Source: Trichoplax adhaerens (lineage: Eukaryota; Animalia; Placozoa). Taken from it: a stretch of DNA of 64,000 nt. Shown piece after piece: positions 6,249-50,030 of this stretch. Made by a program: the position numbers and the translations under genes. The notes below the pieces were generated by a model that saw only the letters and a program-made list of their open reading frames with translations, made no database searches and was not told where the DNA came from. Every line of letters starts with the position of its first letter. Within the stretch, counting starts at the first letter, position 1. Location: positions 432,371-496,370 of the forward strand of contig NW_002060959.1 in assembly GCF_000150275.1 (NCBI RefSeq), in the 5' to 3' direction.

Positions 6249-9149
6249 ATGGGGAGCAGCAACACAAGTATGAAAACTAAAGATAATATCTCTAAGGAAG
6301 GAAAACGTATCATGGATGAAGTTGAATCGATTCGTAAAGCAAGTTTACACGAATTTCACCTTGGATATTATCAGAAAGCATTGGATAACTATAACAAGGC
6401 GTTGAAATTAATTCAAGATCTCCAAGATCAAGATCGGATACAGGCTCAACTACAATGCGATGTCAAATTAGATATTTCTCTAGTTTACTTTCATCAAAAG
6501 CAATTTCAAAAAGCGCGAGAATGGATACAACAATCTCTTCAGCTAGGCAAAAAATTGAAAGACCAACTTCGAATATCTCAAAGTCTAGATAACCGTGCTC
6601 ATGTTAACATCCAAGAAGAACGTAATGATGAAGCTAGAGATGATTTGAAACAGTCGTTAAAGATTAAATTGAAGATTCTCGGAGGGAATCATTTAGACAT
6701 TGCCGTAACTTATCACCGTCAAGGAGATCTGTTATGCAGCGTCGACAAGAATCAGGATGGAATGAGGATGTATGAAAAAGCTTTGCAGATATTGCTCAAT
6801 GCTTCAGAAAGTAAGACTTTAGCACTGGCTGAATTATATCAAGATATAGCCATTGCTTATACCATTACTGAGGAAGAAAAAAATTATAATAAAGCCCTGG
6901 ATTTACTCTCGAAGAGTTTAACTATTCGATCCGATCTTTTAGGCGATCATAATGTTTTAGTAGCGGATTCGTACGATAACATGGGATGGGTCAATAGTGA
7001 GCGAGGCAATCATGATCAAGCTATCCCAATGTATCAAAAGTGTCTCGAAATTAAATTAGCCATTTTAGGAAATACACACTCAGATATTGTCGATCTATAT
7101 GATGCTATTGGCTATTCTTACCGCCGAAATTCGCAATACCAAGAAGCGTTGCAAGTGTATGAAAAATGTCTACATCTACAACAAGAATTACCTGCGGGCG
7201 ATAATGCCGTGATAGTCGATACTTACCGAAATTTAGCATCTGTTTACAACACATTAAACAATTGGGAAGAAGGGATATCAGTATTACAAAAATGTCTTCA
7301 CCATCAGCAAAAATCATTCGGTAAAAATACTGACAAAGCTGCTAAAATATACAACGATATCGCCAGTAGCTATTGTCATCAGAATAAGTTTGATGAAGCT
7401 GCATCCATGTTCCAGGAAAGCTTAGATATTAATTTGAAAATTCACGGAAAAAAAAGCCTAGCAGTAGCTAATAGCTATAAACATATTGGAAGTGCCTATT
7501 TACTTCAACACAAGTTTAATGAAGCTCTAAGCATGTATCAGGAATCTTTAACCATCCAACAACAACTATCTGGTAGTAAAGATGATGATGAGGATGAAAA
7601 AATGTTAGATATGGCTGATACATACCAAAACATAGGACATGTCTATTATCATCAAGAAAAGTTACGAGATGCTTTATCAATGTATCGAAAGTGCTTGGAT
7701 ATCCAGTTACAAAAGCTAGATTCTGAAGATTCAGCCATTGCAAGCTCTTATGAATATATTGGAAATGTTTATTTTGATCTACAGAAATATGATGATGCTG
7801 CTATGATGTATCAGAATTGTCTAAAAATCCATAAGGAAGTATTTGGCGAGGAGAGCTCGAAAGTTGCAGAATCTTACCGTCAAATTGGTCTTATCAACTG
7901 CAAGCAAGAGAAATACAACGATGCCATTGCAAAGATACAAAATGCTCTCGATATATTGCGAAAAGATTCAAAAGAAGAGAATTTACAAATAGCAGAATGT
8001 TACGCTAGTCTTGGCCTTGTCCATAATAAGCTTTTGCAATGTAAACAGGTTTTCGAATATTATCAGAAATGCTTCACTATTCGACAAGAACTGCTGGATG
8101 GAAATGATTTAAGTTTAGCTGAGTCTTATAGTGATATTGCTTTTACTCACGGCAAGCTACTTGAATATGATCAAGCGATAGAGATGTATCAAAAGTGCTT
8201 AACTATTCTTACAGAAGGAAAGGCTAGCAAATCAAGTATTGCTGAAACTTATTTTAACATAGAAGATATTCATAAACAACAAGATAATACGAATCAAGCT
8301 ATGGCTATGCATCAAAAAGGAGTCGATTTTAAGCTCCAAGCTGAAGGAGAGCAGAATTCGGATAGAGCTGAGAGTTATTACTATCAGGCAGACTTGTATC
8401 GAGACCAAGAAAAGTATAAAGATGCTCTATCCTTGTACCAGAAAGCTCTGGATATTTTACTCTCGTCAGTACATAAAAATGGCGACGTTGCAGCGTGCTA
8501 TAGTCAAATGGGCATCGTCTTTAAACGACAAAAAAAATATGCAAAGGCCCTTGTAAAATTCAAGGAATGTTTCGATATATTGTCCAAGGAAAGCGAAAAA
8601 GACAACAATGCTATATCTGCTACGTATCTAAATATAGCCCATACTTATTGGGAGCAGAAAAAATATGAACAAGCAATCGAAACGTTTCAAAATTTTATTA
8701 ATCTTCAACAGCAGATGCATGAAGACAATTTGATGAGTGAAAATGTCATCGATTCTTATAGCAACATTGGAGATTGCTATCATGAATTATCCAAGCATGA
8801 ACAAGCATTGCCAGCATTTGAAAAGTGCTTAGAATTACAGCTGAAAAAATTGGATGCCAAAGATATTAAAATTGCCTACACCTACACCAATATTGCAGTT
8901 TGCTACGAATTTCTGGAGAAGATTGAAGAGGCCATCCAATTTCTTCAAAAATCGGCCGATGTCAAAGGTGCTACGCTAGGAAAGAACCATCCTTCTATTG
9001 CTGATGATTATGATGAAATAGGTTGTCTCTATACGCATATCAATAAGCCAAAAGAGGCTGCTATAAAGCATTTTTATGCCGCAACCATTCGCAATCCTTC
9101 AAATCCGAAAATCAAATCTAAACCAAAGCGTAAATTTGGCAAAGGTTAG
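6249..9149 (+). CDS. Intronless TPR protein (42-aa KLC/nephrocystin-3-type repeats), 966 aa, N-myristoylation-like start
   Basis: Uninterrupted ORF with roughly 20 repeats of A.SY..IG..Y..Q.KY..AL.MY.KCL.I; starts MGSSNTS, ends in basic KIKSKPKRKFGKG. Confidence 0.92.
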   Translation: MGSSNTSMKTKDNISKEGKRIMDEVESIRKASLHEFHLGYYQKALDNYNKALKLIQDLQDQDRIQAQLQCDVKLDISLVYFHQKQFQKAREWIQQSLQLGKKLKDQLRISQSLDNRAHVNIQEERNDEARDDLKQSLKIKLKILGGNHLDIAVTYHRQGDLLCSVDKNQDGMRMYEKALQILLNASESKTLALAELYQDIAIAYTITEEEKNYNKALDLLSKSLTIRSDLLGDHNVLVADSYDNMGWVNSERGNHDQAIPMYQKCLEIKLAILGNTHSDIVDLYDAIGYSYRRNSQYQEALQVYEKCLHLQQELPAGDNAVIVDTYRNLASVYNTLNNWEEGISVLQKCLHHQQKSFGKNTDKAAKIYNDIASSYCHQNKFDEAASMFQESLDINLKIHGKKSLAVANSYKHIGSAYLLQHKFNEALSMYQESLTIQQQLSGSKDDDEDEKMLDMADTYQNIGHVYYHQEKLRDALSMYRKCLDIQLQKLDSEDSAIASSYEYIGNVYFDLQKYDDAAMMYQNCLKIHKEVFGEESSKVAESYRQIGLINCKQEKYNDAIAKIQNALDILRKDSKEENLQIAECYASLGLVHNKLLQCKQVFEYYQKCFTIRQELLDGNDLSLAESYSDIAFTHGKLLEYDQAIEMYQKCLTILTEGKASKSSIAETYFNIEDIHKQQDNTNQAMAMHQKGVDFKLQAEGEQNSDRAESYYYQADLYRDQEKYKDALSLYQKALDILLSSVHKNGDVAACYSQMGIVFKRQKKYAKALVKFKECFDILSKESEKDNNAISATYLNIAHTYWEQKKYEQAIETFQNFINLQQQMHEDNLMSENVIDSYSNIGDCYHELSKHEQALPAFEKCLELQLKKLDAKDIKIAYTYTNIAVCYEFLEKIEEAIQFLQKSADVKGATLGKNHPSIADDYDEIGCLYTHINKPKEAAIKHFYAATIRNPSNPKIKSKPKRKFGKG

Positions 9150-9463
9150 TCTAGAAAATCCCTAAAATTTTGTTGTTTTTCAGATGACAGTCTTAACCCA
9201 TTCCATAAGAGTAACTATTTTAGGATAGCTATTGAAGATGATAATAACAAGTCATAAGTCAATTTTGCGTTCGTATTTTACCGGTCATTTGAACTTATTG
9301 ATCATTCAGTGTTGCTAACGAAAGCTCGTCAATATCAAATAAGTGGAGGTATATATTTTTAGCTAGTAGATACTCTTATGCTAACTAGAACTATTTATTC
9401 TCTTGGAAATACTCCTTTATAGGTAGTGAAAAAAAAAAAAATTATAAGAAATTGTTGGCTGAT

Positions 9464-9742: not shown

Positions 9743-10274
9743 GTCGTGGAATGGTTGCATTTTATTCTTTCACCACAGATTTCTACGTAGTTTATTCCAG
9801 CTGGATGGCATTTTATTTTAAGAATGTCGTCAAGAGTAGAAAAAGAATGAATATAGAAATTTGTGCTTTGTACTAGAGACAAATAATGAATAGGACATCG
9901 TCTAGATACAAATTAAAACATTAGAATTATAAACTCTGGCCATGATTAAAATTCCTTATCCTGATGTAATGCTAATTTTAACTCATACTGCTTTTAATTC
10001 ATTCAACTCGTATAATGTCAAATACAAGAACTGATATACAAAATTTCATGATAAATTGTTGCATATGTATTATATGATGGAAGACACTTAATGATAAAGG
10101 TTACGATAATTTTTAAATTCTTCTTCAAGATTTTGTATTGTAATGTTGCGGCTTTAAAAAATAAATGAATAATTTGATTACGGTAGATTTTACTCAGTAT
10201 CTTAGTATATTGTGAAGCCGACTACTTTATTCGGGTTAGAATTATGGAATATCTACTAACTTAATTTTGTTAAG

Positions 10275-10688
10275 AATCATACCATATATGAGCATCAAAG
10301 TGACCTTGGACAATGCTATAATAAATTATCCAAGCGTGATCAAGCATTGAAAGCAGTTGGGAAATGTTTAGAAATGCGAATAAGTGTCCTAGCGCTTAAT
10401 GATATCCTAATAGCTTATGCATACTTTCATGCTGCTGTTTGTTGCGAACATTTAGGAAAGCTTGAAGATGCTATAACCTTTCATCAAAGATCGATCAACA
10501 TTACATCAAAAGCACTTGGAGAGAGGCATCCTTCTATTGCCGAAAAATATGAAGATATTGGATGTATTCTAGCTCGATTAAATAGAAAAGGCAAAGCTAC
10601 TGCTATGTATTCATATGCTGCAAAGCTTCGTAGTGATCCTTATCCTGAAATCATAGTTGATCGAAAGCGTAAAATTGATGACGATTAG
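10275..10688 (+). pseudogene. Orphan C-terminal fragment of a paralog of the 966-aa TPR gene
   Basis: AVCCEHLGKLEDAI...LGERHPSIAEKYEDIGC...KRK aligns with AVCYEFLEKIEEAI...LGKNHPSIADDYDEIGC...KRK; no ATG or upstream repeats. Confidence 0.8.
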
Positions 10689-12487
10689 TCTGTAATTTTG
10701 CTAGAATCTTGAAATGAATATTAATGTAAAAGATTGTTAACTGATCCACTGAGTAAAAAGTCTACCTTAGCATGGCTTTTGAGATATTAGCAATATCATT
10801 CATTGGCTTGCCTTGAGTTGCTATAAACTGTTGCAGTAAATCTCACTTTAATAAAAACGTGTTTCTCGGTTGATAAGTATCCAATTTCTATGAGCTGTGG
10901 TTGTTTCATCTCTCCAATAAATTTGCTACAGATACCTAAAAATTCATTGATTGAAAAGAAATAGGAGGCTAGCTGCATAATTAAATCAATAAGGTGAAAA
11001 AGAATAAGAAAAATTCAAATTGTGAATCAATCCAAGTTAATTGATGTATTGCAGTCTACTAATATGCAGATTGCCTTAGAGTACGTAGATTTAAATTTTC
11101 GAGATTTATACTATTTTCATCTACAACAATATTTTAGTTTAGTTTTAATTTAATCGATTTAATAGTTTATATAAGTTACTATTAATGCGCAGATACTAAC
11201 CATAAATTTATATATTATTATTGCTAAGCAATTACAAGATAAATCTTGTGTCAAGTTGATTTTACTGTATAATTATATCATTTTTCATTACAGCTTTGAA
11301 CAATTTTAGTTATAATAGACAGGTACTATCAACTAGTAGAAAATCTTGCAAAATATCATGTAGCTTTGTCAAAATATTCCTTTACAAAATAAATGTGTAT
11401 CATTAGGAATTTCATATTGGTTCATTTATCTGATAAAAAACACTTTTTCAATTTGTTAAAATAATCAATTACCTTGTCTATATCGACAAATTTAATCAAA
11501 TTGACAGGGATAAATTTCCCTTATAGAAGCAAAAATATTCTAAAATTTTTTATTAGCCATTTATTATGTCATAGATACTGATGGTGTAACAGCAATCGTG
11601 ATCGAGGTTATCATCGCAGGAGGAGGAAAGGGGGTTTGGATCAGTACAAATAAATACTTGAACAATTGGCGGTTTTATAGCCATTGAGCATAATCGAAAT
11701 GCCTACCACTATAGGAAAGCCCAATAGTTAGTGGACAACAAGGCCTGATTTTGTGATTTTCTAATTTGTTAATGCGCCTTAATGTAAGATAGAATGTTGT
11801 TTATTGAGGTTAGTTGATACTAATGGAGCCTGCAAATATTTCTAAAAGGCGGTGAATGGGTGCGCTGTGTCTCCTACCTAGTTAATAGGCCTAAGTATCG
11901 GAACTAGAGCGCTTATTTCTCGTTAATAGGATTAGCACCACTCCTTAAATCGGTACGATCGGACATTTTTTATGTCATGAAGGCCGAGTAGTACTTCGAT
12001 AACGGCTGTACTCACCTCAACGTATAATAGGTAGTAGAGTTCTAAGCCATAATCACATACAAGACGTGGATTTACATTGAGAAAAGTGCGAGGAAGCTTT
12101 ATTAGAAGTTAATAATTAGTTTACTAACACGAATATTTCTCATATAATAAGATAAATTAGAATTAACTAGTAGAAATGAATTATTGCAATACAGCATCGA
12201 TTACGTGAACTATTAAATCAATATGATACGCTTTCATGACCGTCCGTGCTAGATTACTACAATTTTCCATCGTAATGAATATAAGTACAAACACTTTATC
12301 TGATACTCCATATTATTGTGTAATATTGAGATTACCATAACCATGATCTAGAATTAAAATCGAAGTCATTTCGTAAACAGCCTAAAAAAGAAATTTATGC
12401 TACCTTAGATTCAATTACCGCAGATAGCTTCCGTTTTAGGACTGCACATCATTAAGGTAATTAATTATGCCGATGAGTTTTTGCGTG

Positions 12488-12716
12488 GTTTCTCATATAT
12501 CGTTTGAGTTTGTCCATGCTTACCCTGCTCATCATAGACCTTTCTGATATTGTTATTTGATCAGTAACGAATAGCTATAACCAATGCTCTTATATTATTT
12601 TGTAATGTTACGATGACCATAGCCAAGATCAAAAATTGAATTCGAAGTAATTTCTGAACGGTATCCTCAGGAATTTGATGCTAGCTTCGTTTAAATTATT
12701 GGGGATGCCTCCCATA
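12488..12716 (-). pseudogene. Decayed TPR repeat units immediately downstream of the 1357-aa gene stop
   Basis: 12490-12550 (ttctcatatatcgtttgagtttgtccatgcttaccctgctcatcatagacctttctgatatt) closely copies 12766-12826; a further broken unit lies near 12600-12690. Confidence 0.7.
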
Positions 12717-15700
12717 TCAGGACTGTACATCATCAAAGTAATTATGGTAATCAGTTTTATGTGATTTCTCATACATCTTGTGAGCTTGTTCATGCTTCCC
12801 TTGATCATCATAGACCTTTCTAATATTTTCATATGAATTACCAATATCAGGATGATTGTGATCCAAAGCCAATAATTGAATTTTGAGCGATTTTTGGTAC
12901 ATAGAAAGAGCTTCATCAAACTTGCCTTGGTTTCTATACACCGCTCCCATATTTTTATAAGATCCAGCAATGTCGGGATGATTTCGATCTAAGGCTGATA
13001 GCTGAATTTTAAGTGATTTCTCATGCATTATAAGAGCCTCTTCATATTTGCCCTGATCAGAATAGCCCTTGCCAATGTTGTTATATAATGCAGCAACATC
13101 ACGATAATTGTAGCCAGGGATCGACAATCGAATTTTGAGTGATTGCTCGAACGTAGAAATTGCATCTTCATAGTGGCCTTGATCATAGTATACCGTTCCA
13201 ATGTTGTTATATAATTCGGCCACATCGGGATGATTATTACCAAGAACTGATAACCGGATTTCTAATGACTTCTTATACATAGAAATTGCTTCATCATGCT
13301 TACCTTGAGCACTATATGCGTCTCCAATATTGTTATAAGATTGCGCATTATTGAATTGATTTTGTTCAAGCATTGATAATTCAATTTTGAGCGATTTCTC
13401 ATACATAGATATAGCCTCTTCCTTTTTACTCTGAAGATTGTACATTGCTCCAATACTGTTATAGGACTTGGCGACATCTGAATGATCATGACCAAGGACT
13501 GATATTTGTATTTCAAGTGACCTCTTAAGCATAGAAATAGCTTCATCGTACTTGCCTTGATCGCCATAGGCATTTCCCATATCGTTATATAATTTAGCAA
13601 CATCAGAATGATTGTGACTAAGGACTGATAATCGAATCTTCAGTGATTTCTCATACATACAAATTGCCTCATCATACTTGCCGTTATTTCTATGCGCGAT
13701 GCCCATGTTATTATATGATGTAGCCACATCGGGATGATTGTGACCAAGAACTGATAATTGAATTTTGAGCGATTTGGCAAACAGAGAAAGCGCCTCATCA
13801 AATTTTCCCTGATTATTGTATGCAACGCCTATATTAATGTATGATATAGCAATCTCAGGATGATTGCAATCGAGGGTTGATAATTTAATTTTGAGAGACT
13901 TTTTGTGCATAGTAAGAGCCTCTTGATGGTTGCCCTGGTGATCATAAATTTCTCCAATGTTGTTATAGAGTCCAGCAATCTCCAAATGATCGTTACCATG
14001 AATTGATAACTGAATTTGGAGTGAGTTCTTATACATAGAAATAGCTTCTTCATATTTGCCTTGATGACTATAAACATTTCCCATGGCCATATAAGAATGA
14101 GCTACTTGGGAATGATTATGACCAACGAGTGATAATTTCATCTTGAGTGATTTATCATGCATAGAAATGGCCTCTTGGTGTTTGCCTTGACGACTATAGG
14201 CTTGTCCCATACTTTGATATATTGAAGCGATTTCGATGTGATCACCATCAAAGACTAATAATTGAATTTTAAGAGATTTCTTATACATAGCAATAGCCTC
14301 ATTATACTTACTTTGCTGAAAATAGACCTGTCCGATGCTTGCATAGGATGCCGCAACATCACGATGATTGTGACCAAGAATAGATAATTGAACTTCAATC
14401 GATTTTTCGTATTGGCAAATAGCTTCTTCATACTTGCATTGATTCTTATACACTAATCCAATATTGTTATATGAATTAGCAACACTAGGATGGTTATAAC
14501 CAAAGACTGATAAATGAATATGGAGAGACTTTTCATACATGGATAGAGCCTCATCATATTTGCCTTGAATGCAATGGATATGACCGATGGATCCATAGGA
14601 TTTTGCAACATGAGGATGATTGTGACCAAGAGCTGATATCTGAATTGACAGCGATTTCTCATGCATGGAGAGAGCCTCTTTATATTTTCCTTGATGATAA
14701 TAGGCAATACCTATGTTCGTATATACATAAGTAATATCGGGATGATTGTGGCCAAGGAGGGACACTTGAATTTTGAGCGATTTTTCATACATGGAAATTG
14801 CCTCGTTGTATTTCCCCAAATCACTATAGATAGCGGCTATATTAACGTATGATTTAGCAATCTCTCGATGATTATGGCCAAAAATAGATAATTTAATTTG
14901 GAGTGCCTTTTCAGTCATGTTAATAGCATCTTGATGTTTACTCTGCATATAATATACAGCTCCAATATCATTATAAGATTGGGCAATATCAAGATGATCG
15001 TGGTCAAGGACTAATAATCGAATTTTAAGCGACTTCTCAAGCAAAGAAAGAGCCTCATCATACTTACCCTGATGGATATACACAGCCGCTATATTGTTAT
15101 AGGACGAGGCAACATCGATATGATTTGGGCCAAAAACAGATAGTTGAATATGTAGTGATTTCTCGTATAAGGAAAGAGCCTCATCAGGCTTGCCTTGTTT
15201 CCTATGTACATTTCCCATGTTGTAATATAACGCAGCAACACCTGGATGATCGTGACCAAGATGCAATAATTTAATTTTGAGTGATTTCTCAAACATAGAA
15301 AGAGCCTCATCATACTTTCCCTGATTACTGTACACAGATCCCATGTTGCTGTAGCATGTAGCAATATTGGGATGATTATGGCAAAGAACTAAGAACATTA
15401 TTTGAAGTGCTTTGTCATACATACAAATAGCCTCATCATGCTTGCTTTGAGCACTAAATATAGATGCGATATTATGATAGGAATTGGCAACATGGAGATG
15501 ATTGTGACCGAGAGCTGATAATCGAATTTCTAGCGACTTTTCATATATAGAAAGAGCTTCAATATGTTTGCCTTGATCAAAATGTATCGTTGCAATATTG
15601 TCATATGATTGAGCAACATCAGGATGATTATCGTCAAGGACTAATAGTCGAATTTCGAGCGACTTTTGATACATAGAGATCGCTTCTTCGTGCTTTCCCT

Positions 15701-16790
15701 GGCCGCTATAGACCATTCCCAAGTTATTATATGTTTTGGCAACGTCAGGATGATTGTAGCCAAGGGCTGCTAATCGAATTTTTAGCGATTTCTCATGCAC
15801 AGTTAGAGCCTCATCGTACTTTCCTTGATCACAATATGCAATTCCCATGTTTGTATAGGAGGTTGCAACATCTGCATGATCGGGACTATGAACTGATAAT
15901 CGAATTTGCAGTGAGTTTTGATGCATACTAACGGCCTCTTCATGCTTCCCTTGATCATTACAAACTATTCCTAAGTTATTATATGAATGAGCGACATCAG
16001 AATGATTGCGACCAAAAACTGATAGTCGAATTTTTAGCGACTTCTCATACATTGAAATAGCTTCATCGAACTTGCTTTGATTTCTATACACAGTACCAAT
16101 ATTACTATATGATGTGGCAACATCGGGATGATTATGTCCAAGAGCTGAAAGTCGAATTTGAAGCGATTTTTCATGCATCCTGTAAGCCTCTTCATACTTG
16201 CTCTGATCATGATAAATGCTCCCAATGTTGTAATAAGATTGTGCAACATTAAGATGATTGTGACCGAGAACTGATAACTGAATTTTGACTAACTTCTCAA
16301 ATATAGAGAGAGCCTCATTGCGTCTACCTAAGGCTTGATAAACAACCCCGATCTGATTATACGAATTGCTAATACTTTTATTATCCTTGTCCGAACAATT
16401 CAATTTCATATCCAGCGATTCCATATAATCTTTTAAAGCTCCATCCCAGTCTCGCTGTGATCGTTTTATGTTGCCTTGTCTATCTAAACATTGAGTAATC
16501 AGAATCACTTCCTGGATCTTTTCCGCTACTTTTTGTGCATTTTTATTGAATTTTGCTGCTTCCATCCATTCAGTTCGCTTCATACAGACGTCAGCAGTAA
16601 GAAAATAAACATTGTATCTGAATCGATCTTCAATAGTAGTATCATCGACTACCGCCTGAATTTTATCTAACACTTGTGTATAATAGGACATCGCTTCGTT
16701 AAGATTGCCCGATTGATGATTTTCTACACCCTCTCGGTAAAGAGATTTTACATATTCAGGTATAAGAAACTTGGCCAATGGATTATCCAT
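12717..16790 (-). CDS. Intronless TPR protein, 1357 aa, about 29-30 highly regular 42-aa (126-bp) repeats
   Basis: Uninterrupted ORF with consensus HPDVA.SY.NIG.VY..QGKY.EAISMYEKSL.I.LS.LG.N after a ~95-aa N-terminal cap. Confidence 0.95.
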   Translation of the reverse strand: MDNPLAKFLIPEYVKSLYREGVENHQSGNLNEAMSYYTQVLDKIQAVVDDTTIEDRFRYNVYFLTADVCMKRTEWMEAAKFNKNAQKVAEKIQEVILITQCLDRQGNIKRSQRDWDGALKDYMESLDMKLNCSDKDNKSISNSYNQIGVVYQALGRRNEALSIFEKLVKIQLSVLGHNHLNVAQSYYNIGSIYHDQSKYEEAYRMHEKSLQIRLSALGHNHPDVATSYSNIGTVYRNQSKFDEAISMYEKSLKIRLSVFGRNHSDVAHSYNNLGIVCNDQGKHEEAVSMHQNSLQIRLSVHSPDHADVATSYTNMGIAYCDQGKYDEALTVHEKSLKIRLAALGYNHPDVAKTYNNLGMVYSGQGKHEEAISMYQKSLEIRLLVLDDNHPDVAQSYDNIATIHFDQGKHIEALSIYEKSLEIRLSALGHNHLHVANSYHNIASIFSAQSKHDEAICMYDKALQIMFLVLCHNHPNIATCYSNMGSVYSNQGKYDEALSMFEKSLKIKLLHLGHDHPGVAALYYNMGNVHRKQGKPDEALSLYEKSLHIQLSVFGPNHIDVASSYNNIAAVYIHQGKYDEALSLLEKSLKIRLLVLDHDHLDIAQSYNDIGAVYYMQSKHQDAINMTEKALQIKLSIFGHNHREIAKSYVNIAAIYSDLGKYNEAISMYEKSLKIQVSLLGHNHPDITYVYTNIGIAYYHQGKYKEALSMHEKSLSIQISALGHNHPHVAKSYGSIGHIHCIQGKYDEALSMYEKSLHIHLSVFGYNHPSVANSYNNIGLVYKNQCKYEEAICQYEKSIEVQLSILGHNHRDVAASYASIGQVYFQQSKYNEAIAMYKKSLKIQLLVFDGDHIEIASIYQSMGQAYSRQGKHQEAISMHDKSLKMKLSLVGHNHSQVAHSYMAMGNVYSHQGKYEEAISMYKNSLQIQLSIHGNDHLEIAGLYNNIGEIYDHQGNHQEALTMHKKSLKIKLSTLDCNHPEIAISYINIGVAYNNQGKFDEALSLFAKSLKIQLSVLGHNHPDVATSYNNMGIAHRNNGKYDEAICMYEKSLKIRLSVLSHNHSDVAKLYNDMGNAYGDQGKYDEAISMLKRSLEIQISVLGHDHSDVAKSYNSIGAMYNLQSKKEEAISMYEKSLKIELSMLEQNQFNNAQSYNNIGDAYSAQGKHDEAISMYKKSLEIRLSVLGNNHPDVAELYNNIGTVYYDQGHYEDAISTFEQSLKIRLSIPGYNYRDVAALYNNIGKGYSDQGKYEEALIMHEKSLKIQLSALDRNHPDIAGSYKNMGAVYRNQGKFDEALSMYQKSLKIQLLALDHNHPDIGNSYENIRKVYDDQGKHEQAHKMYEKSHKTDYHNYFDDVQS

Positions 16791-39210: not shown

Positions 39211-39648
39211 AGACATTAAATTAATCGTATTTTATTTATTACTTGTTGGAATTATTGTTTTTGAAAGCCATAATTCCACATTAATTATTCGTTAATTTTA
39301 AAATACGTTCTCTTCTATTCCCGTAGCTAATTACAAAAATTTCCTGACAGAACAAATTTAAACTTTTATCTAGGTTATAAAAATGACAATATTCCCATCT
39401 GCTATATACCCTATTCTATTTTTTATAATGCTGTGAGGCATAATTGCGTTTTTATAACTATGACGAGTTAGTAGCAATGACAACATGGTCGTAATGGCCA
39501 GTTGAGTTGGATGCTGGAGAGTGAGATACGTGTATGTGGTATAATTCAGTTTTATTGCATGAAACATCAATTGCTAAACATTAGATATGACGAGAATTCG
39601 AAAAAATTTTCCTTATATATCACTGCTATTAATTGATTAAACGACTCA

Positions 39649-42640
39649 TTATAACACTTTAATCTTAGCATATACTTCGCTCGCTAGAATTTTTTCAGCA
39701 AGCGGGCGTTCTTTTGGGTTACTGCAAAGCAATCATCTTATGAAATCCGCCTAGCATAGTTAGCAAGTTTAAAGAATGAATTTCTGTTGACTTATAAATT
39801 GTATTGATTCGATAACGAGGCATAACTCCCAAGGTTTTTAATTATCGCTAAACGTATTATCAAACTCATTCCGCTCTCGTAAATTAAACAAGAGCTATAA
39901 AGTCAATATTTTCAATCATTTTCTACCTTTATTACTTTTGACACTCTATTTAAACTTTTAGTTGATTGAACTCACTTTGATTCGTTCCATTCCAGTTGCC
40001 ATCGGATGAAGCAATTTAATTATGCCTAATGCATAAATATCTACTTTTTGGCTATAATATTTTCTAGATACCTAATTGGGTTATCCAAAATCGAGTATGA
40101 TTCAATCAACTGTCAAAATGAAGAAGTAAACGGTAAATACTGCATAAATTATCTGTTCCGGGCTCATATATAATATAGTACCCACATCCCTAGTATATAT
40201 TCGTATTTCACCTTCATGCCCTTTAGCCGTGCTTTGAGGTAAGTTATCTATCATGCAGTCATAAATTAGCTTGTCGATACGCAGCTATAGCCAATTCATG
40301 CTATCTACTTCTAAATAATTTAAATTTCTGATTAGTATTTTTATTAGTAATTATAATCACTGTGATCAATTGCCAAACCAAAATCGCCAATTTTTATTAG
40401 GCCATCCATAGAAAAGAATATGTTGGCGGGCTACAAGTCAACAGGTAATTCATATTATAAACACTATTATGATATCGTGATTTCACTAAACGACTCTGAT
40501 ACTGTGAGTTATCCTATTTACAGTACTACTTTTAAATCTCTTTGAATTAATCCAATATTATGGATGTAGACGAGGGCCTTGAGAATCTATAAATTAAGAA
40601 GCGGTAAAGATTTATGCATTGTGTACGCTAACAAAGCTGAGTACATGATAAATATGATTGCTTAGAAAGAGTGCCACACAATATGTTACCTTGATTTCTA
40701 GGCTTACCTGATCAAATATATCATAACATTTACTAACGTTCCAATTTTGATCATGTATTTGCAACCATTTGTCCAACATTTTTGGCAATTCGATGATCAG
40801 TTTGGTGGTATAGAAGATGGGCTACAGTTTTATTTTCAAGCTATCAAGCTCGATGGGTTACGATGGTGGCAATACTAGCAACAAGGATGCGTGGAGTAGC
40901 TTCCTATTTCTAGAATTTTTACTTAAAGAAGGAAATAGTAGTGATTCGATACAAATTGCCTTTGAAACCAATAATGACATTAGACTGAGTCATTGCAACT
41001 CAAGAATTGTTTTCAAAGAAGAAGATTCGCTCGTATATCGCCTTTTACTCGTGGTAAGCCTTCTAATAGCAGTGGAGTTAAGGTCGCCATCTTATGTCAA
41101 TTCAAGCGTTAGAAAAGTAGTTCACAACCAAATAATGATCATTTAAGGAATCCTTCAAGTTCGGAGATTATTTTCGAAGAAAGAGAGGCCACATCAGCAT
41201 TGTGATAGCTAAGAATGATCAAATATTCGATACACGATTTATCGATTATATAATTATCGAGAGTAAGATACAATCACTGAACCTACTAAATCAGGAGCTT
41301 GGTCTTCAATGGCTACTAGCGATTCCTTAGCTATTTCTGAGGTACTAGGATCCAATTTGAACTTCATCATCAGCCACCTTGCCACCTTTCACCTTTTCTA
41401 AACTGGTCCTTAACCATAGACAGTATTTTCCCATCCTCATCATCATCATCGCCATGGAAACATCAAAAATCGAATGTATTACAGATTTATCTTGAACAAA
41501 CTAGGAATAACATGCTAAGGCAGCAATACAAATTAACCCACAGTGCCTATTGGAGTCTTTGATGTTCCTTCATCAAAGTAGCATAATATCCATCGCCAAT
41601 GATTAATTTTGTTTCATTTAGCCGACTAAATATTGCGTAGCCGAATCTTGGAGTGTAGATGAAGAGCCATGTTAAGCGTAGTATTCTACAAACAGTCAAT
41701 CTCAGCCAAGAAAGGTTCTCAGCCAGAGCGTCCATCATTATCAATAGTAGGATACCCGAATTCCGTTAATGGGAATGATCAAACTAGACGAGGAATGCGT
41801 AGAGTTAGTAATTATAGTCTGTATTGCTGAGCTAGACAGATCTAATGGATGAGGAACTGATTTGCCTAGACAATTGTATTACTTCCATCCTTGCAGTAAA
41901 CTGCCGATAGTTTTGTATATGTATTCTATCCAATTCCAGCTGGGTTTTGCTAGTTTAAAATGATTAGTTTTGAATAACATTTTTCTGTTAATCAGGTCAT
42001 TCTGCATTTCAAGAAGTTCCTTCCTACCTGCATCAACCACTTAGATAACAGTATATTCGTGGTACAAGAATTGATGATAGGCATACGACATGTAGCTACA
42101 TGGAAAGTATTGTTCATTTTTGTTATCAGATCGTCCTGCATTTGAAGAAGTTCCTTCTTAGCAGCATAGGCCACTTAATTTTATTCATGGTACAAGAATA
42201 GATGGCAGATATACAACATGAAACTACATTGAAAGCAGCTGTGTTTGTTATTATAATTTAATCGATAGCATACTCCATCGAAATGATTAATACATAAATG
42301 AACAAGAGAATCATACACGCAAAAGCAATATCGTTCGGACAGGAAAAAGCTGTAATTGGATTATTTGGATCAGTCGAAGTCTGTAACGTCATCTCTGCCG
42401 GATCTATTAGAGAGCTTCAAAACTGGAAATGGAATAGATGATTACCGCAATGTAAAGATAATCATTTCATAGCTCCGTGTCTAGCTATGGACGCAATCAA
42501 TTTTTCTTATGATGATGTTAGTAGGACATCTCTTTCTCAAACGATGTCGTAATTTGCGAACATAGTTTCAAAAACATCTTTCTTTTGGAAAAGCAAAGAC
42601 CTCTAGCAATACATGCTACAAAATGGAGCAACGCCTGGAC
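39649..42640 (-). pseudogene. PERK pseudogene B: luminal and TM remnants, N-lobe exons deleted, inverted insert (~40800-41210), degenerate kinase C-lobe
   Basis: C-lobe very similar to copy C but HRD>QRD (40542-40544), donor GT>AT (40151-40152), lost donor after DFGLAIDH and a frameshift after DIYALGI. KELLQMQD matches copy A KELLQMRD. Confidence 0.88.
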
Positions 42641-43097: not shown

Positions 43098-46000
43098 TTA
43101 TTCAACTTCAATCTTAGCGTACATTTCGCTCGCTAAAATTTCTTCAGCGAGTGGGCGTTTTTTGGGGTCTCCACAAAGTAACCACCTTATGAAATTTGCC
43201 TAGTACAGTCAGCAAGAGCAAATAGTGAATTTTTGTTGACTCGTATTGTTAATCTTATTGATTCGATAACATAGCATACCTCTAATGGTCTCTCCTTGCT
43301 AAACATACTATCAAATTTATTTTGTTCTCGTAAATTGGACAAGAGCTATAAAGTAGGTCATTATATTTTCAATTATCGTCTACCCTCATTACTTTTACCA
43401 CTATAATTGAAAAACTATAGTTGATTGCACTTACTTTAATTCGTTCCATTCCAGTTGTCATTGGATGAAGTAGTTCGTAAAGTATTATGCCTAATGCATA
43501 AATATCTACTTTTTGGCTACAACGTTTCCCCGACACCTAGTTGAGTTATCCAAACAAGACATTGTTACCGGCAATGTGTAGAAACGGGACGTTACCCTAT
43601 ATAAATTACCTGCTCAGGGCTCATATACAACATAGTGCCCACATTTCTAGAATACTTTTTACGTTCATGACCTTTACTCGTGCTTTGGGATAAACTATCT
43701 ATCGTATCTACGGTAACAAAATTAACTTGTCAATACGAAATAACGCAACGCAATCAAGATGAAAACAGTTAAAATTTTGATTCGTATCTGTAGTGGTCAC
43801 AGTACCATAGTCGCCGTAATCAATAGCCAAACCAAAATCTCCAATTTTCACAAGGCCATCCATTGAAAAGAATACATTAGCAGGCTATAATGTCAACAGG
43901 TAATTCATATTATAAACATTAATGCTATTATGCCTTTGTTGAAAGACAATGATACTCGGTACTGAAAATTATCCAATTTATCGCATTACCTTTAAATCTC
44001 TATGAATCAATCCAATATTATGGATGTAGACTAGGGCCTTTAGAATCTACAAATTAACAAGCGATAGAAAATTTTTGCACTACATATGATAGCACAGCTG
44101 AGTACCAGCTAGATATGATTCATTAGAAAGACGACCACAAAAATTATCCTCCTCACTTATAGGTTTACCTGATTAAATATATCATAGCATTCACTAAAAC
44201 TGCGATTTTCAACATTTTTTTGTAACCATTTGTCCAATGTTTCAGAGTGGCAAAGTTGCATTTGAATGAATAAATAGCTAGGTGGTTTTACCACTTCTGT
44301 CGGACAAGACTGATGGCGTTTTCTCGCTTTTCTAACACTTGAATTAACATGAGAGGATGATGATGTTGCCCCAATGACGCTGTTATTGGAAGGTTTACCA
44401 CTAGTACCAGGTAATATTGCATCTTCTTCGAAAACAATCCCTGAGTTGGAATTGCTCATTCTAAGGTCGTCACTCGTTTCCGAATTCTCAAAGGCAATTT
44501 CCATCGAATCCTTGGCACTTTCTTCTCCAAGTCCGGATTCTTGAAAAATTATACTACCCGATGTATCATCACCGCTATTATTGTCATTATTATGATCGAT
44601 CGACTTTGATAGTCCGCGAAAACTAAACTCTAGAGAGTTTCGTGCAAATCGTACTGATGATTTAAACTTTCCATTGAGAGAATTGCTTTCCAATTCTGTA
44701 ATTTGGTCAGTATAGGACCAAGAATAATTTAGTTTTCGGTTCACGTTTGAGGACTGAAATGAACTTTCGGTTTCAAAATTTTCATTATCGTCTTCGGTAG
44801 CAAAAGCCCGTGAGCTTTCTTCACTATAAAATTAAACGAATAATTAAGTTTTATTTTTACCAAGGCAGTACAAACTTCAACACTGTTTTAGTTGCCAATG
44901 CTATTGTCAAGTGCTGTACCTAGCAAGTATGTCAGAATTCTTTGACCAGCTGCTTGATGATTCCTCTACCCATGCGTTATAATAACGTACTGTTCCAATA
45001 TGATCCAATTTGGCTAGCAACTTTACTTCCCGTAAGACTTTTTCACGTTTTTCATCCCTAAGAATGCAAATACATAATCGCTTTCATTAAGAGATATTCT
45101 TGAAAAAGTGTTATCGAATCGAATCTTTTACCAATACAATCATTGTTTACCTATCAGGCAATCGCACTATTTTAAGGGCGTAATCCTGATCGTCAAATTT
45201 CTTTTTAGCTTTGTACACAACACCATATCCACCACGTCCTAGCTTCTCTTTTAATTCAAATTCACTATCCAGCCTAACGAAAAAGTTGACATATAAGGTT
45301 ACAAAAAGGCATCATATCATTTGTAGTCAGCATAATGGAGTACCGTGAAATTTGAATCATCTCTCCATTGTCGGTGTTACCATTCTAAAAGACATTACGA
45401 TGAAGATATGAGAAATATTGCACTGTAACATGTCAATAATTAAATCTTCGTATTACCGAATTGCTTCCTGATAAAGTAGTAGATGTTGTTAACGTATCAG
45501 ATGAAGGCGGCACAGAGCTTTGATCCTGAAAATTATCGATTATAATTATTACTATCATAGATGTATTTATGAAGCATTCGAACTACAATTTCAACGAAAT
45601 TAAGCACCTTGTCCTCGCTAAACATTGGCGATTCCTTTTCTGTCTCCGAGGTATCATTATCTATTTTAGGTTCATCAGTTGCTGTTTCACGTCTTCTAAT
45701 CCAGCGCTGTACCACATAGGATGTGAGAAGAAATTGCACGCTACAAATCACTAGTATCTCTTTCCTAATCGTCACAATGACAAAGAAATGAACTTAGGAA
45801 TTGTAGAAGAATTCTAAAGAAAGTCGCGACAGTACTATAAAAAAGGATATGCAATTACCACCAATCCCAGATTGAACCTTTAATGTTTCCCATGATAGTT
45901 GCATAATAAACATAATTTCCATCGCTAATTAGCTGTTGATTTGGCTTTTTTTGACTGACTAGAATTTCACCATCATCTATGAAACAGCATTTAGTAATTA

Positions 46001-49000
46001 GTTAAGAAAGCATAATAGAATGACTAAACATGGTAAAGTTTTAGGTTCTCAAATTTTAGAACTATACAAACCGAATGGATAAGGAACTGATTTGTCTTTT
46101 AACGCAATTTCATTGCTTCCATACTTGTTAGTTTTCACAATGGGCGTTCTACTATGCAAGGCAGAAAGTTTATACATATACCAACCCATTCCAGCGGCTT
46201 TCGCTAGTTTTGAAAAATCACTAGTAATCAATGTTTTCTCATCTCCGCTCGTCAGATGATCCCTCATTTGAAGAAGTTCTTTTCTAGCAGTATCAGCTGC
46301 TTTCATTTTATTAACGGTGCATGAATCGATAGTTGGATTTATGTACAGCTGATTGTTGTAAGTTCCTGCAAAATTTGACAGTAACTTTACAAAGCGAAGT
46401 GTATAATAACATTTTACATTCGACATTTTGATCTTATTAGAAAACATCGTGCACAAATTAACGGCGTACCTATGTACATAAAAATAGCATTATCTACACG
46501 GGATAAAGCGGTAGTTTTATGATTTGAATCAGTCGATGAGGAGGTTGAGAAGTCAATTCCTTGTGAGTTTCCGGTACCAGAAAGGACCATATCAATTTGA
46601 CGCAGCTTGCCATTTGATAACACCCAGGTTGTCGCTACAGGAGCTTCAAGCTGTAAATACGATGGATGATTAACAAATGGAAGCATGATAATGCCTGTAG
46701 ACACCCGTTTGGATGTCTGTACTATAATTAATTAATCTTGCGACAATTTATTACCTCTTTTTCCCAAATAAGGTCACTTAGGGAACCCAATCTGCGGATA
46801 GTGTTACAAGAACAGCTTTATTATTAGCTCTACAGCAATGTAACCTACATGTACTCGTACGTGCATATGTAAAACAATACCATCCATACCCTGAGAATGC
46901 ATATACTTTGTTTTTGGAAAAGCTGATGTATACTTTTTCCCCATCATTTGTTTCAATACTAACAGGCGTAGCCCTGCCGTCAGAATCACAATGATGCTCT
47001 TCGTCTTCATTAGGTAACGATAGCTTATACTGTCCAACAGTTAAATTCCATCTGCAATGTATTTTGATTTATCGTTATGGAAATATATTGATGACATAAG
47101 AGAATTACTTGCATGACAGATTACGACAAAACACAGACATAATTTTATATTGCGTAAATCTAATATTGGTACTAGCATCATCTGAGACTAAAGAAAGTTA
47201 CGTTAGCTTATACAACTAATACCTTTCTGATCCAGATACCATATCAACAGCTCGTAGACCTTCTTGTTCCCGTCTAACAATCAAGATTTCATCAGCAACC
47301 GCTTCAGTTCCCGAAGACTTGCAACCTTCCCCAGTGCATATATACTGAATCTGTATAATTTACAAGATAGCAATGTTAATAAAGAAATACTAAAAATTTG
47401 AGTCTTATGTGCTACGTAAGATAGCTAGTCATTTTCCCTCATGCCAAAGAATTTGGGTATCGCGGGTTTGAATACTGTCAGACGCACAAAGCAAACATAA
47501 TTTAAAGTAGCCATGACACTGCGCAGCAATTAATAAATATAATATGCGTAAAATCATTTTCTAACTCAGCCTGTCTACTCTTAGAGTAAAATATTCGCTA
47601 TTGAAATAAATAGTCTGCTTTGTGTTACATCATATAATTTATTATGTCATTCTTTTTTAGGGGATTAGTACTAAAATACTTATTAGCCTGCAGAGGATGA
47701 TATAAAACCAACATGCGCACATATGCATTCAACGACATATTCGCCACGTTATAATACTGCACAATAATAAAATGTCACGATATTGCCACGTGTTTTGATG
47801 GTGAAAGAAATTGACGAATAGAGTTAGAAAGCGAATAATTATACAGTGAAATGGCTCATTTGAGTATTTTATGTCGAGAAGGGATACTATAACAATAAAT
47901 CTTCACCACGATATTCTACGAAAAGTTATTTACTGTTCATTAAAATCGATTGGAATTATATGAAATAATGATATAGCAGTTTCAATTTTATGTATTATTA
48001 TATAATTATCAGAGACCAATCACATTCTCGCTTTCGAATTGTGAATAGATATTTAATTATTGATCATACATCATAACATCCATTCACTCGTTTCTTGAAT
48101 CTAGAAATAGCTACAAAAGCCGAGGAACAGTTGAATTGACATCGAACAAAATCAAGGGATGTTATCATTCATTTTATGCAAATTTAAAAGTAATGTATTA
48201 ATTTCAACTAAATATGTTGCTCGCAGAGATGAATAATGAAGTACAGTACCTTTCCTGTTACATAGTTTATTCCATACAGATGCACGTGCTTGCTGCCAGA
48301 AAGAACCGACTTATCGCTGACCTTGTACGATCTGGAGAGCATATCTTCGGCTGTAAACGGCATTAACTAAAATAGTAGGATTAGAAAGAGTTTAGTAACT
48401 TTTAGCCAAAATTTACTGCGCTTACTGAAGTGTACATGACCTCATGAAAATAGATTACAAGAAAGAAAATCTACTTTTCATTCACAACTTCATATTGATT
48501 TATTAATTAACTACATAAAGTATAATTCAATATACTGCAGGCGATATAATGTACTTCTAATTTTAATACCGGTTTATGAATTGTATTTTGTTATGATGCA
48601 GTTTGCATTTTTCTAAAGTAGGACATTTAACAACTTGGCATGTAAGTGCTAATCCTTTGTTTAAGTAGTCATCGAATATTACTGTTATACTACTGGATAT
48701 TAAGATGTCCTTGTTGATTAAATCATAATTTCTGTTTGTTCAATTTTTAAAAATACTACTAAAACACCCTATTGCAATACATGAAATTAAAGAAAATAGC
48801 CAAAAAATTTTCAGCTGATCGAATGTCACTTTACAAATCATGCTGAAATATTATTGTGTTATAAGAAAAGTTGTCATATACAATTCAACTCGTATTTGCA
48901 GAAGCAATAATAGAAAGACGATATCATTGACAGCAGCAATATCTTTGGATTTGTCTAGCAAAACGGCAATGGCACAGTTTATCGGGCCGATTTTTCACAT

Positions 49001-50030
49001 AAAATGATAATATAATAATAACGTCCTTGTTGCAATGACACAATTGATACAGTAATGTTAAGAAATTGAACAGTTTTGACTAAAGATAGCAATCTATTCT
49101 TAGGGCTAGGATGGTATGGTTACTGAAATTATTTTAATACAATTCGTTTGGTTTAATGTCATAGCGGTACCTTGACATGTCCTCTTTCTTGATAATATAT
49201 ATGGCCATCGAGAGAGGGAATCAGTTTAGGGGCATCGACTTCTCTCTGTCAATGAAAGGTAAATGTAATTCATTACGGTCATAGCTTATTTTAGGATTAT
49301 TATTTCAGGCATTTTTTTGGAGAATTACAAATAACATCAATTAGAAAGACTATCCAATAAGTCTATCCAGTAACGCGTGCTGCTGCCGACATCAATGCTG
49401 ACTGACTGATATTAAAGATCCAAGCAGCAGCCATGTATTAGCTCGGTAAAAGAAGGAAAGAAAGTATCTTTCGATCTTACCTTGACGGTCGTTGTTGATG
49501 AAGAGACTAGAGGTCCTAATAACGAATGCAAAATCCAATGTTTTTGCCCATTTCCTTTAGCGTCTAGAGCGGTTAATTTTCCATCCAATGTGCTAACAAT
49601 AATCAACGAATTGCTAGGGGAAAAAAATAAAGGATAATCAGTTTTGGTGATGCTTTTCCTCCTCATTAGCCAAGAGTTGATGATGGCTAGATCACGACTC
49701 ATAAGAAAAAATGGTCATGGCGATTCTCCTCTATGACTTCTACTATTTAGAGACTCTACTGTTGAAAACAGTCTTGACAGGGCTATACTAAACAGTCATG
49801 ATGGGCATGACGTCAGGTATAGGTCAAGGAAAAACAAAAATCGAGAAGCTTCCACCCCATGACTGGAAAACTTACCACGAACCAGCGCTACATTTTAACG
49901 TAGAAACACTCTTTGAATCATCCAGTCCATTAGCGTGACATAATAATAATGAAATAATCCATACGAAGACAAGATGGCATCGAAATTGCTTTAACATAAG
50001 GTTGCAAGAGCGACGAAATTGGTAATCCAT
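43098..50030 (-). CDS. EIF2AK3: Eukaryotic translation initiation factor 2-alpha kinase 3 (PERK), full-length copy A, about 22 exons
   Basis: Signal-peptide exon 50030-49876; luminal motifs [54 protein letters not shown]; WWKEI plus TM; kinase LGRGGYG, YALK, VRYYNAW, long acidic/Ser insert, [30 protein letters not shown]. Exon phases join in frame where checked. Confidence 0.92.

What the first reader, a model, noticed from the sequence alone, without database searches (positions are those of the whole stretch)
6249..50030. Candidate stress/immunity locus: diversifying TPR array next to a birth-and-death array of eIF2-alpha kinases
Seen: ~44 kb consists almost entirely of two tandemly expanded families (8 TPR genes/fragments and 5 PERK-derived segments) with frameshifts, inversions and repeat-number change, flanked by apparently ordinary genes. 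Known: PERK is usually single-copy in animals; eIF2-alpha kinases such as PKR shut down translation in antiviral defence; TPR solenoids are recognition modules in IFITs and fungal/bacterial NLRs. Inference: a lineage-specific sensor (TPR) plus translational-shutoff (kinase) defence module, with kinases decoupling from the ER-stress sensor. Physical linkage alone does not show shared function.
Basis: partly seen in the sequence, partly recalled or inferred. Interest (0 to 1): 0.8.

Follow-up and report, generated by a model that had tools for sequence, protein, structure and literature searches.

The report
Placozoan PERK duplicates beside TPR genes
The genome's only PERK stress-kinase locus holds one normal gene, one fast-evolving copy with a cut-down sensor domain and three dead fragments. 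It lies next to an old cluster of repeat-protein (TPR) genes, a family found all over this genome, so the two are probably neighbours by chance and not a defence module.

Summary
Positions 6.2-28.2 kb carry five intact intronless KLC/NPHP3-type TPR genes and three fragments. Positions 29.4-50.3 kb carry five PERK-derived segments and are the only PERK locus in this 105.6-Mb genome, which looks like Trichoplax adhaerens and is not human.

- **Copy C (43098-49997, minus strand):** a complete canonical PERK.
- **Copy B and the two inverted pieces:** dead. B arose from a partial tandem duplication and never had an N-lobe.
- **Copy A (30339-35878, minus strand):**
  - It keeps the signal-peptide exon, the exon matching C's candidate membrane-segment exon, and all nine kinase exons. 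Splice sites, exon phases and catalytic motifs are intact.
  - Its luminal sensor is reduced to a diverged stub.
  - One TAA stop lies in the kinase insert.
  - Since the duplication its kinase core has changed 44 residues, against 1 in C.

The defence-module reading is not supported:
- TPR genes of this type lie at 100 or more sites on dozens of scaffolds.
- The local TPR paralogs are ancient (25-42% protein identity), while the PERK duplication is recent (introns 72% identical).
- The two families sit in separate blocks, not in repeated TPR-plus-kinase units.
- No NOD, death-fold or J domain is present.

"Kinase decoupled from the ER sensor" is partly supported, for copy A only. Other agents in this scan had already noted TPR arrays elsewhere in this genome.

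The parts
6249..9149 (+). TPR gene T1: intronless, 966 aa, 22 KLC-type 42-residue units
   Evidence: Pfam TPR_12 4.8e-133. Nearest solved structures are kinesin light chain TPR domains. Unit count.
10260..10688 (+). TPR fragment T2: 3 units, 44% identical to the C-terminus of T1; no upstream part found
12468..12560 (-). Isolated single TPR unit just downstream of T3
12717..16790 (-). TPR gene T3: intronless, 1357 aa, 30 units. Period 126 nt, 64% nucleotide matches, mean 52% protein identity between units.
17901..18575 (-). TPR pseudogene fragment T4: 6 units spread over three reading frames
19900..22017 (+). TPR gene T5: about 705 aa from the first ATG, 15 units. Closest paralog of T1 (40% identity) and shorter at the C-terminus.
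24283..25068 (+). Short TPR gene T6: 261 aa, 4 units
27386..28159 (+). Short TPR gene T7: 257 aa from the ATG, 5 units. Closest paralog of T6 (33% identity). Lies tail to tail with PERK copy A.
30339..35878 (-). PERK copy A: signal-peptide exon, diverged luminal exons 2, 3 and 5, the exon matching C's candidate membrane-segment exon (tandemly duplicated), and kinase exons k1-k9 with all motifs. The luminal sensor is largely lost. The duplicated flanks reach 29424 and 36224.
31787..31789 (-). The only in-frame stop (TAA) in copy A, in the kinase-insert exon. It lies inside a possible 96-nt GT..AG in-frame intron (31845-31750).
37256..38610 (+). Inverted piece 1: about 250 nt of the kinase-insert exon in reverse, plus about 1 kb of sequence found only at this locus
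38681..40781 (-). PERK pseudogene B: starts in mid k3 and has no N-lobe. HRD is changed to QRD, TAA in k8, TGA in k9, donors of k6 and k8 lost, 6-nt deletion in k7.
40789..42072 (+). Inverted piece 2: about 300 nt of the kinase-insert exon in reverse; 75% identical to piece 1
43098..49997 (-). PERK copy C, the canonical gene: ATG at 49997, luminal exons colinear with a PERK profile, a candidate membrane-segment exon, kinase exons k1-k9, stop at 43098. The duplicated flanks reach 42208 and 50346.

Best explanation
Two unrelated things lie side by side.

(1) An old local cluster of intronless TPR-only genes of the kinesin-light-chain / nephrocystin-3 type. It is one of a great many such clusters in this placozoan genome.

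(2) The genome's single PERK (EIF2AK3) locus, reshaped by recent lineage-specific segmental duplication.
- Copy C is the working ER-stress kinase. By analogy with characterised PERK, its luminal domain senses unfolded protein, the kinase dimerises and phosphorylates eIF2-alpha, and translation is attenuated.
- A whole-gene duplication produced copy A.
- A 3.5-kb partial tandem duplication, running from mid-insert exon to the 3' flank with its inverted piece, produced B and inverted piece 1. These were dead on arrival. Patches of B were later homogenised with A.
- Copy A then lost most of the sensor through exon losses that can all be read as in-frame. It evolved fast at the protein level but kept its open frame, splice sites and catalytic residues. 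It is therefore most likely a still-coding or only recently disabled kinase whose luminal part no longer resembles the PERK sensor.

Shown here: the copies, their lesions, their relative ages, the rate asymmetry and the genome-wide spread of the TPR family. Inferred: the function of C, the coding status of A, and that the adjacency to the TPR genes is coincidental.
For: - **PERK is confined to this locus**.
- **Copy C:** its luminal exons are colinear with a profile built from five PERKs. All nine kinase exons have AG/GT sites and the motifs GRGGYG, ALK, REV, HRDLKPAN, DFG and SPE.
- **Copy B:** the lesions are listed.
- **Repeat unit:** 37256-40781 matches 40789-44237.
- **Outgroup:** a 4.5-kb metagenome contig (L001) carries a C-type ortholog. 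Intron identity is A-C 72.5%, C-L001 49% and A-L001 48%, so A and C split after that lineage diverged.
- **Rate asymmetry**, polarised with L001 over 256 core codons: 44 residue changes in A against 1 in C. Nucleotide changes by codon position are [33,18,37] in A and [3,4,24] in C.
- **Copy A is still constrained:**
  - no indel in any core kinase exon;
  - no stop in the core, although 88 neutral substitutions would give 4.5 stops, P(none)=0.01;
  - 81 of 88 PERK-invariant positions kept, against 79 of 119 variable ones;
  - luminal exons 2, 3 and 5 keep AG/GT sites, the same length modulo 3 as in C, and the same open frame despite length differences of 9, 12 and 30 nt;
  - the exon 1 donor GTAAGT is kept in phase.
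- **Sensor loss in A:** no profile hit for the luminal core. Exon 2 no longer matches the solved PERK luminal domain (against 9.5e-8 for C). About 1.3 kb of C (47135-45840) has no counterpart in A.
- **TPR family is genome-wide and old**, with no effector or NOD domain nearby.
Against: - Copy A has a TAA in the kinase-insert exon.
- Copy A has lost the acceptors of luminal exon 4 and of the juxtamembrane exon.
- My crude estimate of omega on the A branch is about 0.6.
- A-specific changes since the split from B show no third-position excess ([6,8,10]).

These points fit a pseudogene that died not long ago. No transcript, protein or second close genome was available, so neither the coding status of A nor the absence of co-regulation with the TPR genes was measured. 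My rough estimate is that a given gene has a TPR neighbour by chance about 1-5% of the time. That is small, though the adjacency was picked out after the fact.
Confidence: 0.72

Rival explanations
1. One reading: the TPR genes are recognition modules and the PERK paralogs are translational shut-off effectors of one lineage-specific defence locus.
For: The two families are physically adjacent. Copy A evolves fast and has lost the canonical ER sensor, as might be expected of a kinase recruited to a new input. From general knowledge, TPR proteins can regulate eIF2-alpha kinases (P58IPK) or act in antiviral defence (IFIT).
Against: TPR genes of this type are found genome-wide, while PERK is confined to this locus. 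The TPR paralogs here are far older than the PERK duplication. The repeats contain no [TPR + kinase] unit. T7 and copy A are convergent, so they share no promoter. No NOD, death, Roc or J domain is present. The closest solved relatives are kinesin light chains, not IFIT or P58IPK.
Confidence: 0.06
2. All extra PERK copies, including A, are pseudogenes in neutral decay. Only C matters.
For: A has a TAA in its insert exon. Two exon acceptors are lost and the central luminal exons are deleted. The A:C asymmetry in residue changes is 44:1, with a nearly flat codon-position spectrum. Changes on the recent A branch show no third-position bias.
Against: The kinase core of A has no frameshift or stop, with P about 0.01 under neutrality. 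Fourteen exons keep both splice sites and their phase, including three strongly diverged luminal exons whose length changes are all multiples of three. Substitutions avoid PERK-invariant positions: 7 of 88 changed against 40 of 119. B, which is certainly dead, collected two stops, two lost donors and an HRD change over a shorter time.
Confidence: 0.3
3. Assembly artefact: the copies are mis-assembled alleles or collapsed reads, not real paralogs.
For: The assembly is an older draft with many scaffolds.
Against: The window has no gaps. The copies differ by 23-40% with many indels and different exon content, far beyond allelic divergence. The repeat junctions are clean and nested.
Confidence: 0.02

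Closest known systems
PERK / EIF2AK3 (metazoan ER-stress eIF2-alpha kinase)
   Same: Copy C has the full layout: signal peptide, PERK/IRE1-type luminal domain, a candidate membrane-segment exon, and a kinase with the long insert and the YLxIQMQLC motif. Solved PERK structures are the best hits for both domains. The kinase exons of copy A are also closest to PERK.
   Different: This locus holds extra copies. As far as I know PERK is normally single-copy in animals, and two literature searches found no report of a placozoan PERK duplication. Copy A lacks a recognisable luminal sensor.
PKR and PKZ in vertebrates (lineage-specific duplication and rapid evolution of an eIF2-alpha kinase)
   Same: A duplicated eIF2-alpha kinase in which one copy evolves fast and has a changed sensor module.
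   Different: Copy A derives from PERK and has no dsRNA- or Z-DNA-binding domain. Omega on the A branch is below 1, so positive selection is not shown. No link to infection was tested.
Kinesin light chain / nephrocystin-3 type TPR (Pfam TPR_12, TPR_NPHP3) expansions in placozoans
   Same: 42-residue units, intronless genes in tandem clusters, variation concentrated at helix-A positions 3, 6, 10, 13 and 14. Other agents of this scan described the same family on other scaffolds.
   Different: The window's genes are TPR-only. They have no Roc-COR, NB-ARC or death-fold exon. Their units are old (52% identity), not near-identical.
P58IPK (DNAJC3), a TPR protein that binds and inhibits PKR and PERK
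   Same: It is a precedent, from general knowledge, for a TPR protein acting on the PERK kinase domain.
   Different: P58IPK has nine classical 34-residue TPRs and a J domain. No J domain or P58IPK-like match was seen here.

Membership tests
PERK / EIF2AK3 | eIF2-alpha-kinase type catalytic domain with all catalytic motifs and a long insert between the N-lobe strands | tested here: met
   C and A have GxGxxG, the beta-3 Lys, the alpha-C Glu, HRDLKPAN, DFG, SPE and a 162-218-residue insert exon ending in YLxIQMQLC. PERK is the best solved match and GCN2, HRI and PKR are much weaker. In B the HRD motif is QRD and the copy is truncated.
PERK / EIF2AK3 | PERK/IRE1-type luminal stress-sensing domain | tested here: met
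   Met for copy C only: 9.5e-8 to solved PERK luminal domains and six colinear profile hits. Not met for copy A: no profile hit, exon 2 has no PERK match, and the central exons are deleted.
PERK / EIF2AK3 | Type I ER membrane topology (signal peptide and one transmembrane helix) | tested here: inconclusive
   Hydrophobic N-termini ([20 protein letters not shown] in C, MQFRYRLVFVWIILPLLLC in A). The A-C alignment of the region upstream of k1 and the A-C match of the open segments 45536-45793 and 32969-33190 (36% identity) mark a candidate membrane-segment exon, read by eye. No topology predictor was available.
PERK / EIF2AK3 | Phosphorylates eIF2-alpha Ser51 on ER stress | not testable with these tools
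   Needs a biochemical assay.
KLC / NPHP3-type TPR (Pfam TPR_12) | Tandem 42-residue TPR units matching TPR_12, TPR_10 and TPR_NPHP3 | tested here: met
   E-values from 1e-23 down to 0 for the five ORFs. Kinesin light chain is the best solved match. 28 copies of a 126-nt period in T3.
NLR / STAND or ROCO-type immune receptors with TPR sensor arms | A nucleotide-switch domain (NB-ARC, NACHT or Roc-COR) and/or a death-fold effector joined to the repeats | tested here: not met
   No such Pfam family in any TPR ORF or in ten of the 62 open segments of 45 aa or more that lie between the genes.
IFIT or P58IPK-like TPR regulators of translation | Sequence relationship to IFIT, or TPR plus a J domain | tested here: not met
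   No J domain. No IFIT or DNAJC3 chain among the solved matches at E up to 1e-10.
Co-amplified defence gene cluster (sensor and effector duplicated together) | Repeat units that contain both families, or linkage conserved across species | tested here: not met
   Self-comparison shows separate blocks and no mixed unit. The duplication ages differ widely. Cross-species linkage could not be tested, because only a 4.5-kb contig of a relative was reachable.

The most novel reading that the evidence does not exclude
Copy A is a working ER-anchored eIF2-alpha kinase whose luminal part was cut down and remodelled under selection. That would make it a new input module on a PERK chassis, for example a sensor of something in the ER lumen other than unfolded protein. 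Placozoans keep a rickettsial symbiont inside the rough ER lumen of fibre cells (PMC6784892), so a fast-evolving luminal receptor on a translational shut-off kinase could monitor or control that compartment. This link is speculation; nothing here tests it.
Probability: 0.12. Interest if true: 0.75.

Novelty: new variant of a known kind. Interest (0 to 1): 0.38.

Why it matters
As far as I know, PERK is a single-copy, slowly evolving gene in animals. This locus shows, in one of the simplest animals, a recent duplicate whose kinase stays intact while its sensor is dismantled and its protein changes about forty times as much as its sister (44 residue changes against 1). If copy A is expressed, it is a natural experiment in rewiring the integrated stress response. 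It also becomes directly testable whether new inputs to eIF2-alpha kinases arise by remodelling an existing sensor. The result also removes a tempting but unsupported "TPR sensor plus kinase" immune-locus claim. In this genome, adjacency to a TPR array carries little information.

Tried and rejected
- **Synteny in other placozoans.** The exact-protein look-up of T6 found no record. The homolog search with T7 returned only itself. The representative search with C's insert exon gave one close relative on a 4.5-kb metagenome contig. That contig served as an outgroup but is too short to show neighbouring genes.
- **Transposon origin of the inverted pieces.** Their non-PERK part occurs only at this locus.
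- **Repeat element inside C.** The 146-residue open frame at 46052-46489 has no other copy in the genome outside this window.
- **Hidden death, Roc or NB-ARC exons between the TPR genes.** None were found.
- **Literature on placozoan PERK paralogs or TPR-PERK links.** Nothing was found.
- **Nei-Gojobori dN/dS for A against C** (0.14 in the core). I dropped it as a measure of A's constraint because it averages both branches. The outgroup-polarised counts are more informative.
- **B as a neutral control for A.** Rejected, because B is a mosaic homogenised with A (73-95% identity in patches).
- **Joined spliced proteins.** These were neither built nor searched. All searches were exon by exon, which limited sensitivity in the large databases.
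Full report
**Source.** The window is G000:C1398:432371-496370 of a 105,631,681-bp assembly in 1414 contigs with about 33% GC.
- Eitel et al. state that the ten longest T. adhaerens scaffolds (70.3 Mb) make up 66.5% of the assembly and that the longest is 13.2 Mb (PMC6067683). That matches this genome's size and its hits beyond 12.8 Mb on one contig.
- Other agents' notes also call this genome Trichoplax. I take it as Trichoplax adhaerens or a very close relative. It is not human.

**Observation, TPR side.** Five long intronless ORFs are TPR_12 / TPR_10 / TPR_NPHP3 proteins, and their nearest solved relatives are kinesin light chain TPR domains.
- A profile of the 42-residue unit counts 22 units (T1, 6249-9149), 30 (T3, 12717-16790), 15 (T5, 19900-22017), 4 (T6, 24283-25068) and 5 (T7, 27386-28159).
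- It also finds three fragments: 10260-10685, a single unit at 12489-12554, and a frameshifted six-unit piece at 17952-18479.
- The paralogs are old. T1-T5 share 40% protein identity, T6-T7 33%, and all other pairs 25-31%.
- T3's internal repeats have only 64% nucleotide matches and 52% mean protein identity. The most variable columns are 3, 6, 10, 13 and 14.

**Observation, PERK side.** Self-BLAST gives this layout: A (29424-36224, -), inverted piece 1 (37256-38610), B (38681-40781, -), inverted piece 2 (40789-42072), C (42208-50346, -).
- The stretch 37256-40781 is a direct repeat of 40789-44237. So a 3.5-kb unit, running from the middle of the kinase-insert exon through the 3' flank and the inverted piece, was duplicated in tandem. 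B therefore never had N-lobe or luminal exons.
- The inverted pieces carry about 250-300 nt of the insert exon in reverse. The rest of their sequence occurs only at this locus.

**Identity of the PERK copies.** All searches were exon by exon.
- C's exon at 49415-49714 matches solved PERK luminal domains at 9.5e-8.
- The insert exons of C and A end in the PERK motif YLxIQMQLC and have PERK as their best solved hit.
- A's second kinase exon hits PERK at 3.8e-8, against 0.017 for GCN2 and HRI.
- Searching the whole genome with C's luminal and insert exons finds only this locus. These are therefore all the PERK copies the genome has.

**Copy C.** Nine kinase exons were mapped, all with AG/GT sites:
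- k1 45273-45151
- k2 45057-44920
- k3 about 44823-44169
- k4 44046-43990
- k5 43884-43806
- k6 ending at 43610
- k7 43536-43435
- k8 43345-43280
- k9 43199-43098

All catalytic motifs are present. A profile built from five PERKs returned gives six colinear luminal hits between 49230 and 46289. The ATG is at 49997 and is followed by a signal-peptide-like segment. C is a canonical PERK gene.

**Copy B.** It starts in mid k3. Its lesions are HRD changed to QRD, a TAA in k8, a TGA in k9, GT donors lost after k6 and k8, and a 6-nt deletion in k7. It is a pseudogene. Its identity to A varies between 73% and 95% in patches, which points to gene conversion.

**Copy A, what is kept.**
- All nine kinase exons have the same lengths as in C (apart from the insert exon k3). 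Their splice sites and motifs are conserved, with GSGGYG for the glycine loop.
- The only in-frame stop is a TAA at 31787-31789 in the poorly conserved insert. It sits inside a possible 96-nt GT..AG in-frame intron (31845-31750).
- Upstream, the exon 1 donor GTAAGT is kept in phase.
- Luminal exons 2, 3 and 5 keep both splice sites and the same open frame. Their lengths stay equal to C's modulo 3 (124 against 133, 87 against 75, and 98 against 128 nt), even though they are strongly diverged.

**Copy A, what is lost.**
- The exon 4 acceptor is gone.
- About 1.3 kb of C carrying exons 6-8 has no counterpart in A.
- The acceptor of a juxtamembrane exon is deleted.
- Each of these losses can be read as frame-preserving. 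Exon 4 is 117 nt and the juxtamembrane exon is 69 nt. Exon 5 ends with two spare bases, and the exon matching C's candidate membrane-segment exon begins with one spare base in both copies.
- No luminal profile hit remains in A, and its exon 2 no longer matches solved PERK.

**Dating and rates.** The only close relative reachable was P0002 on L001, a 4519-bp ENA metagenome contig that carries a C-type ortholog.

| Pair | Intron identity | Kinase-core protein identity |
|---|---|---|
| A-C | 72.5% | 77.7% |
| C-L001 | 49% | 87.5% |
| A-L001 | 48% | 70.7% |

- The intron figures show that the A/C duplication, or its last homogenisation, is younger than the split from L001's lineage. The core protein identities run the other way.
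- Polarised with L001 over 256 core codons, A has 44 unique residue changes and C has 1. Nucleotide changes by codon position are [33,18,37] for A and [3,4,24] for C. My crude conversion gives omega of about 0.6 for A and about 0.08 for C.
- More distant PERK outgroups give the same direction: 14-17 unique changes in A against 6-8 in C.

**Is copy A dead?**
- Against a long-dead pseudogene:
  - 88 random substitutions in the core give 4.5 stops on average, and P(none) is 0.01.
  - The core exons have no indel, while the A-C introns differ in length in every case.
  - A's changes avoid PERK-invariant positions: 7 of 88 changed, against 40 of 119 variable positions.
  - The three diverged luminal exons keep their frame.
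- For a pseudogene:
  - the TAA;
  - the lost acceptors;
  - the nearly flat codon-position spectrum;
  - no third-position excess on the short A branch since the split from B ([6,8,10]).
- I put about 0.6 on "coding now or until very recently".

**The module hypothesis.**
- TPR_12 gives 2164 first-look candidates, and the 106 scored matches lie on at least 25 contigs, with open frames up to 8698 residues.
- The 144-residue head of T1 has at least 105 matches on dozens of contigs, often in local arrays. T6 has 246 matches.
- Other agents noted many TPR arrays, and TPR-Roc-COR-death families, elsewhere in this genome. I use that only as context.
- In the window the TPR genes carry no other domain. 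Ten of the 62 open segments of 45 residues or more between the genes gave no family match.
- The two families occupy separate blocks, and no repeat unit mixes them.
- The TPR duplications are far older than the PERK duplications.
- T7 and copy A are convergent.
- My rough estimate: with 100-300 such genes among roughly 11,500 genes (gene number from memory), a given gene has a TPR neighbour by chance about 1-5% of the time.
Co-regulation and interaction remain untested.

**Literature.** Searches found no description of placozoan PERK paralogs or of a TPR-PERK link. A survey of eIF2-alpha kinase evolution does not mention placozoans. The placozoan immunity paper reports NLR-like genes with TPR or WD40 arms but does not mention eIF2 or PKR. 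Placozoans host a rickettsial symbiont in the rough ER lumen (PMC6784892). I mention this only as background for the speculative reading of copy A.

**Verdict.**
- The defence-module interpretation is not supported.
- "Birth and death" of the PERK copies is supported.
- "Kinase decoupling from the sensor" is partly supported, for one copy.
- The noteworthy item is copy A, a recent, fast-evolving PERK paralog with a dismantled sensor. I class it as a new variant of a known kind, of moderate interest, pending transcript evidence.

Noticed in passing
window:29002-29227, 38479-38837, 41882-42174 (compare 46052-46489): Short pieces downstream of each kinase 3' end resemble part of a 146-residue open frame inside C's luminal region (shared motif NKMK.VD..RKELL). 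That open frame has no other copy in the genome outside this window. This suggests an older rearrangement that moved a luminal-region piece to the 3' flank before the copies multiplied.
   Followed up: partly
window:32642-32838 and 32907-33093: Copy A carries an internal tandem duplication (72% identity) of its candidate membrane-segment / juxtamembrane exon region, so it has two versions of that exon.
   Followed up: partly
window:50815-51071: A 129-nt segment is repeated twice head to tail at 99% identity, between the PERK C promoter region and the RF-1 domain gene.
   Followed up: no
window:12762-16712: In T3's 28 aligned units the most variable columns are 3, 6, 10, 13 and 14 of the 42-residue repeat, on a conserved scaffold. 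Other agents reported a similar pattern for younger arrays elsewhere in this genome. Here the units are old (52% identity).
   Followed up: partly
window:6249-6270: T1 begins MGSSNTS, which fits the usual N-myristoylation pattern (Gly2, Thr6). This was read by eye only and not tested.
   Followed up: no
L001:1-4519: A contig from an ENA metagenome assembly (ERZ27263980, k141_134889; 30% GC) carries a C-type PERK ortholog. So DNA of another placozoan-like animal is present in that sample. The 2.4 kb downstream of its stop shows no TPR gene and no PERK fragment.
   Followed up: partly
window:2219-3820, 51792-52049, 62595-63187: The flanking genes are ordinary: a secretin-family 7TM receptor, an RF-1 domain (peptide release factor-like) gene and an isocitrate dehydrogenase.
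   Followed up: yes
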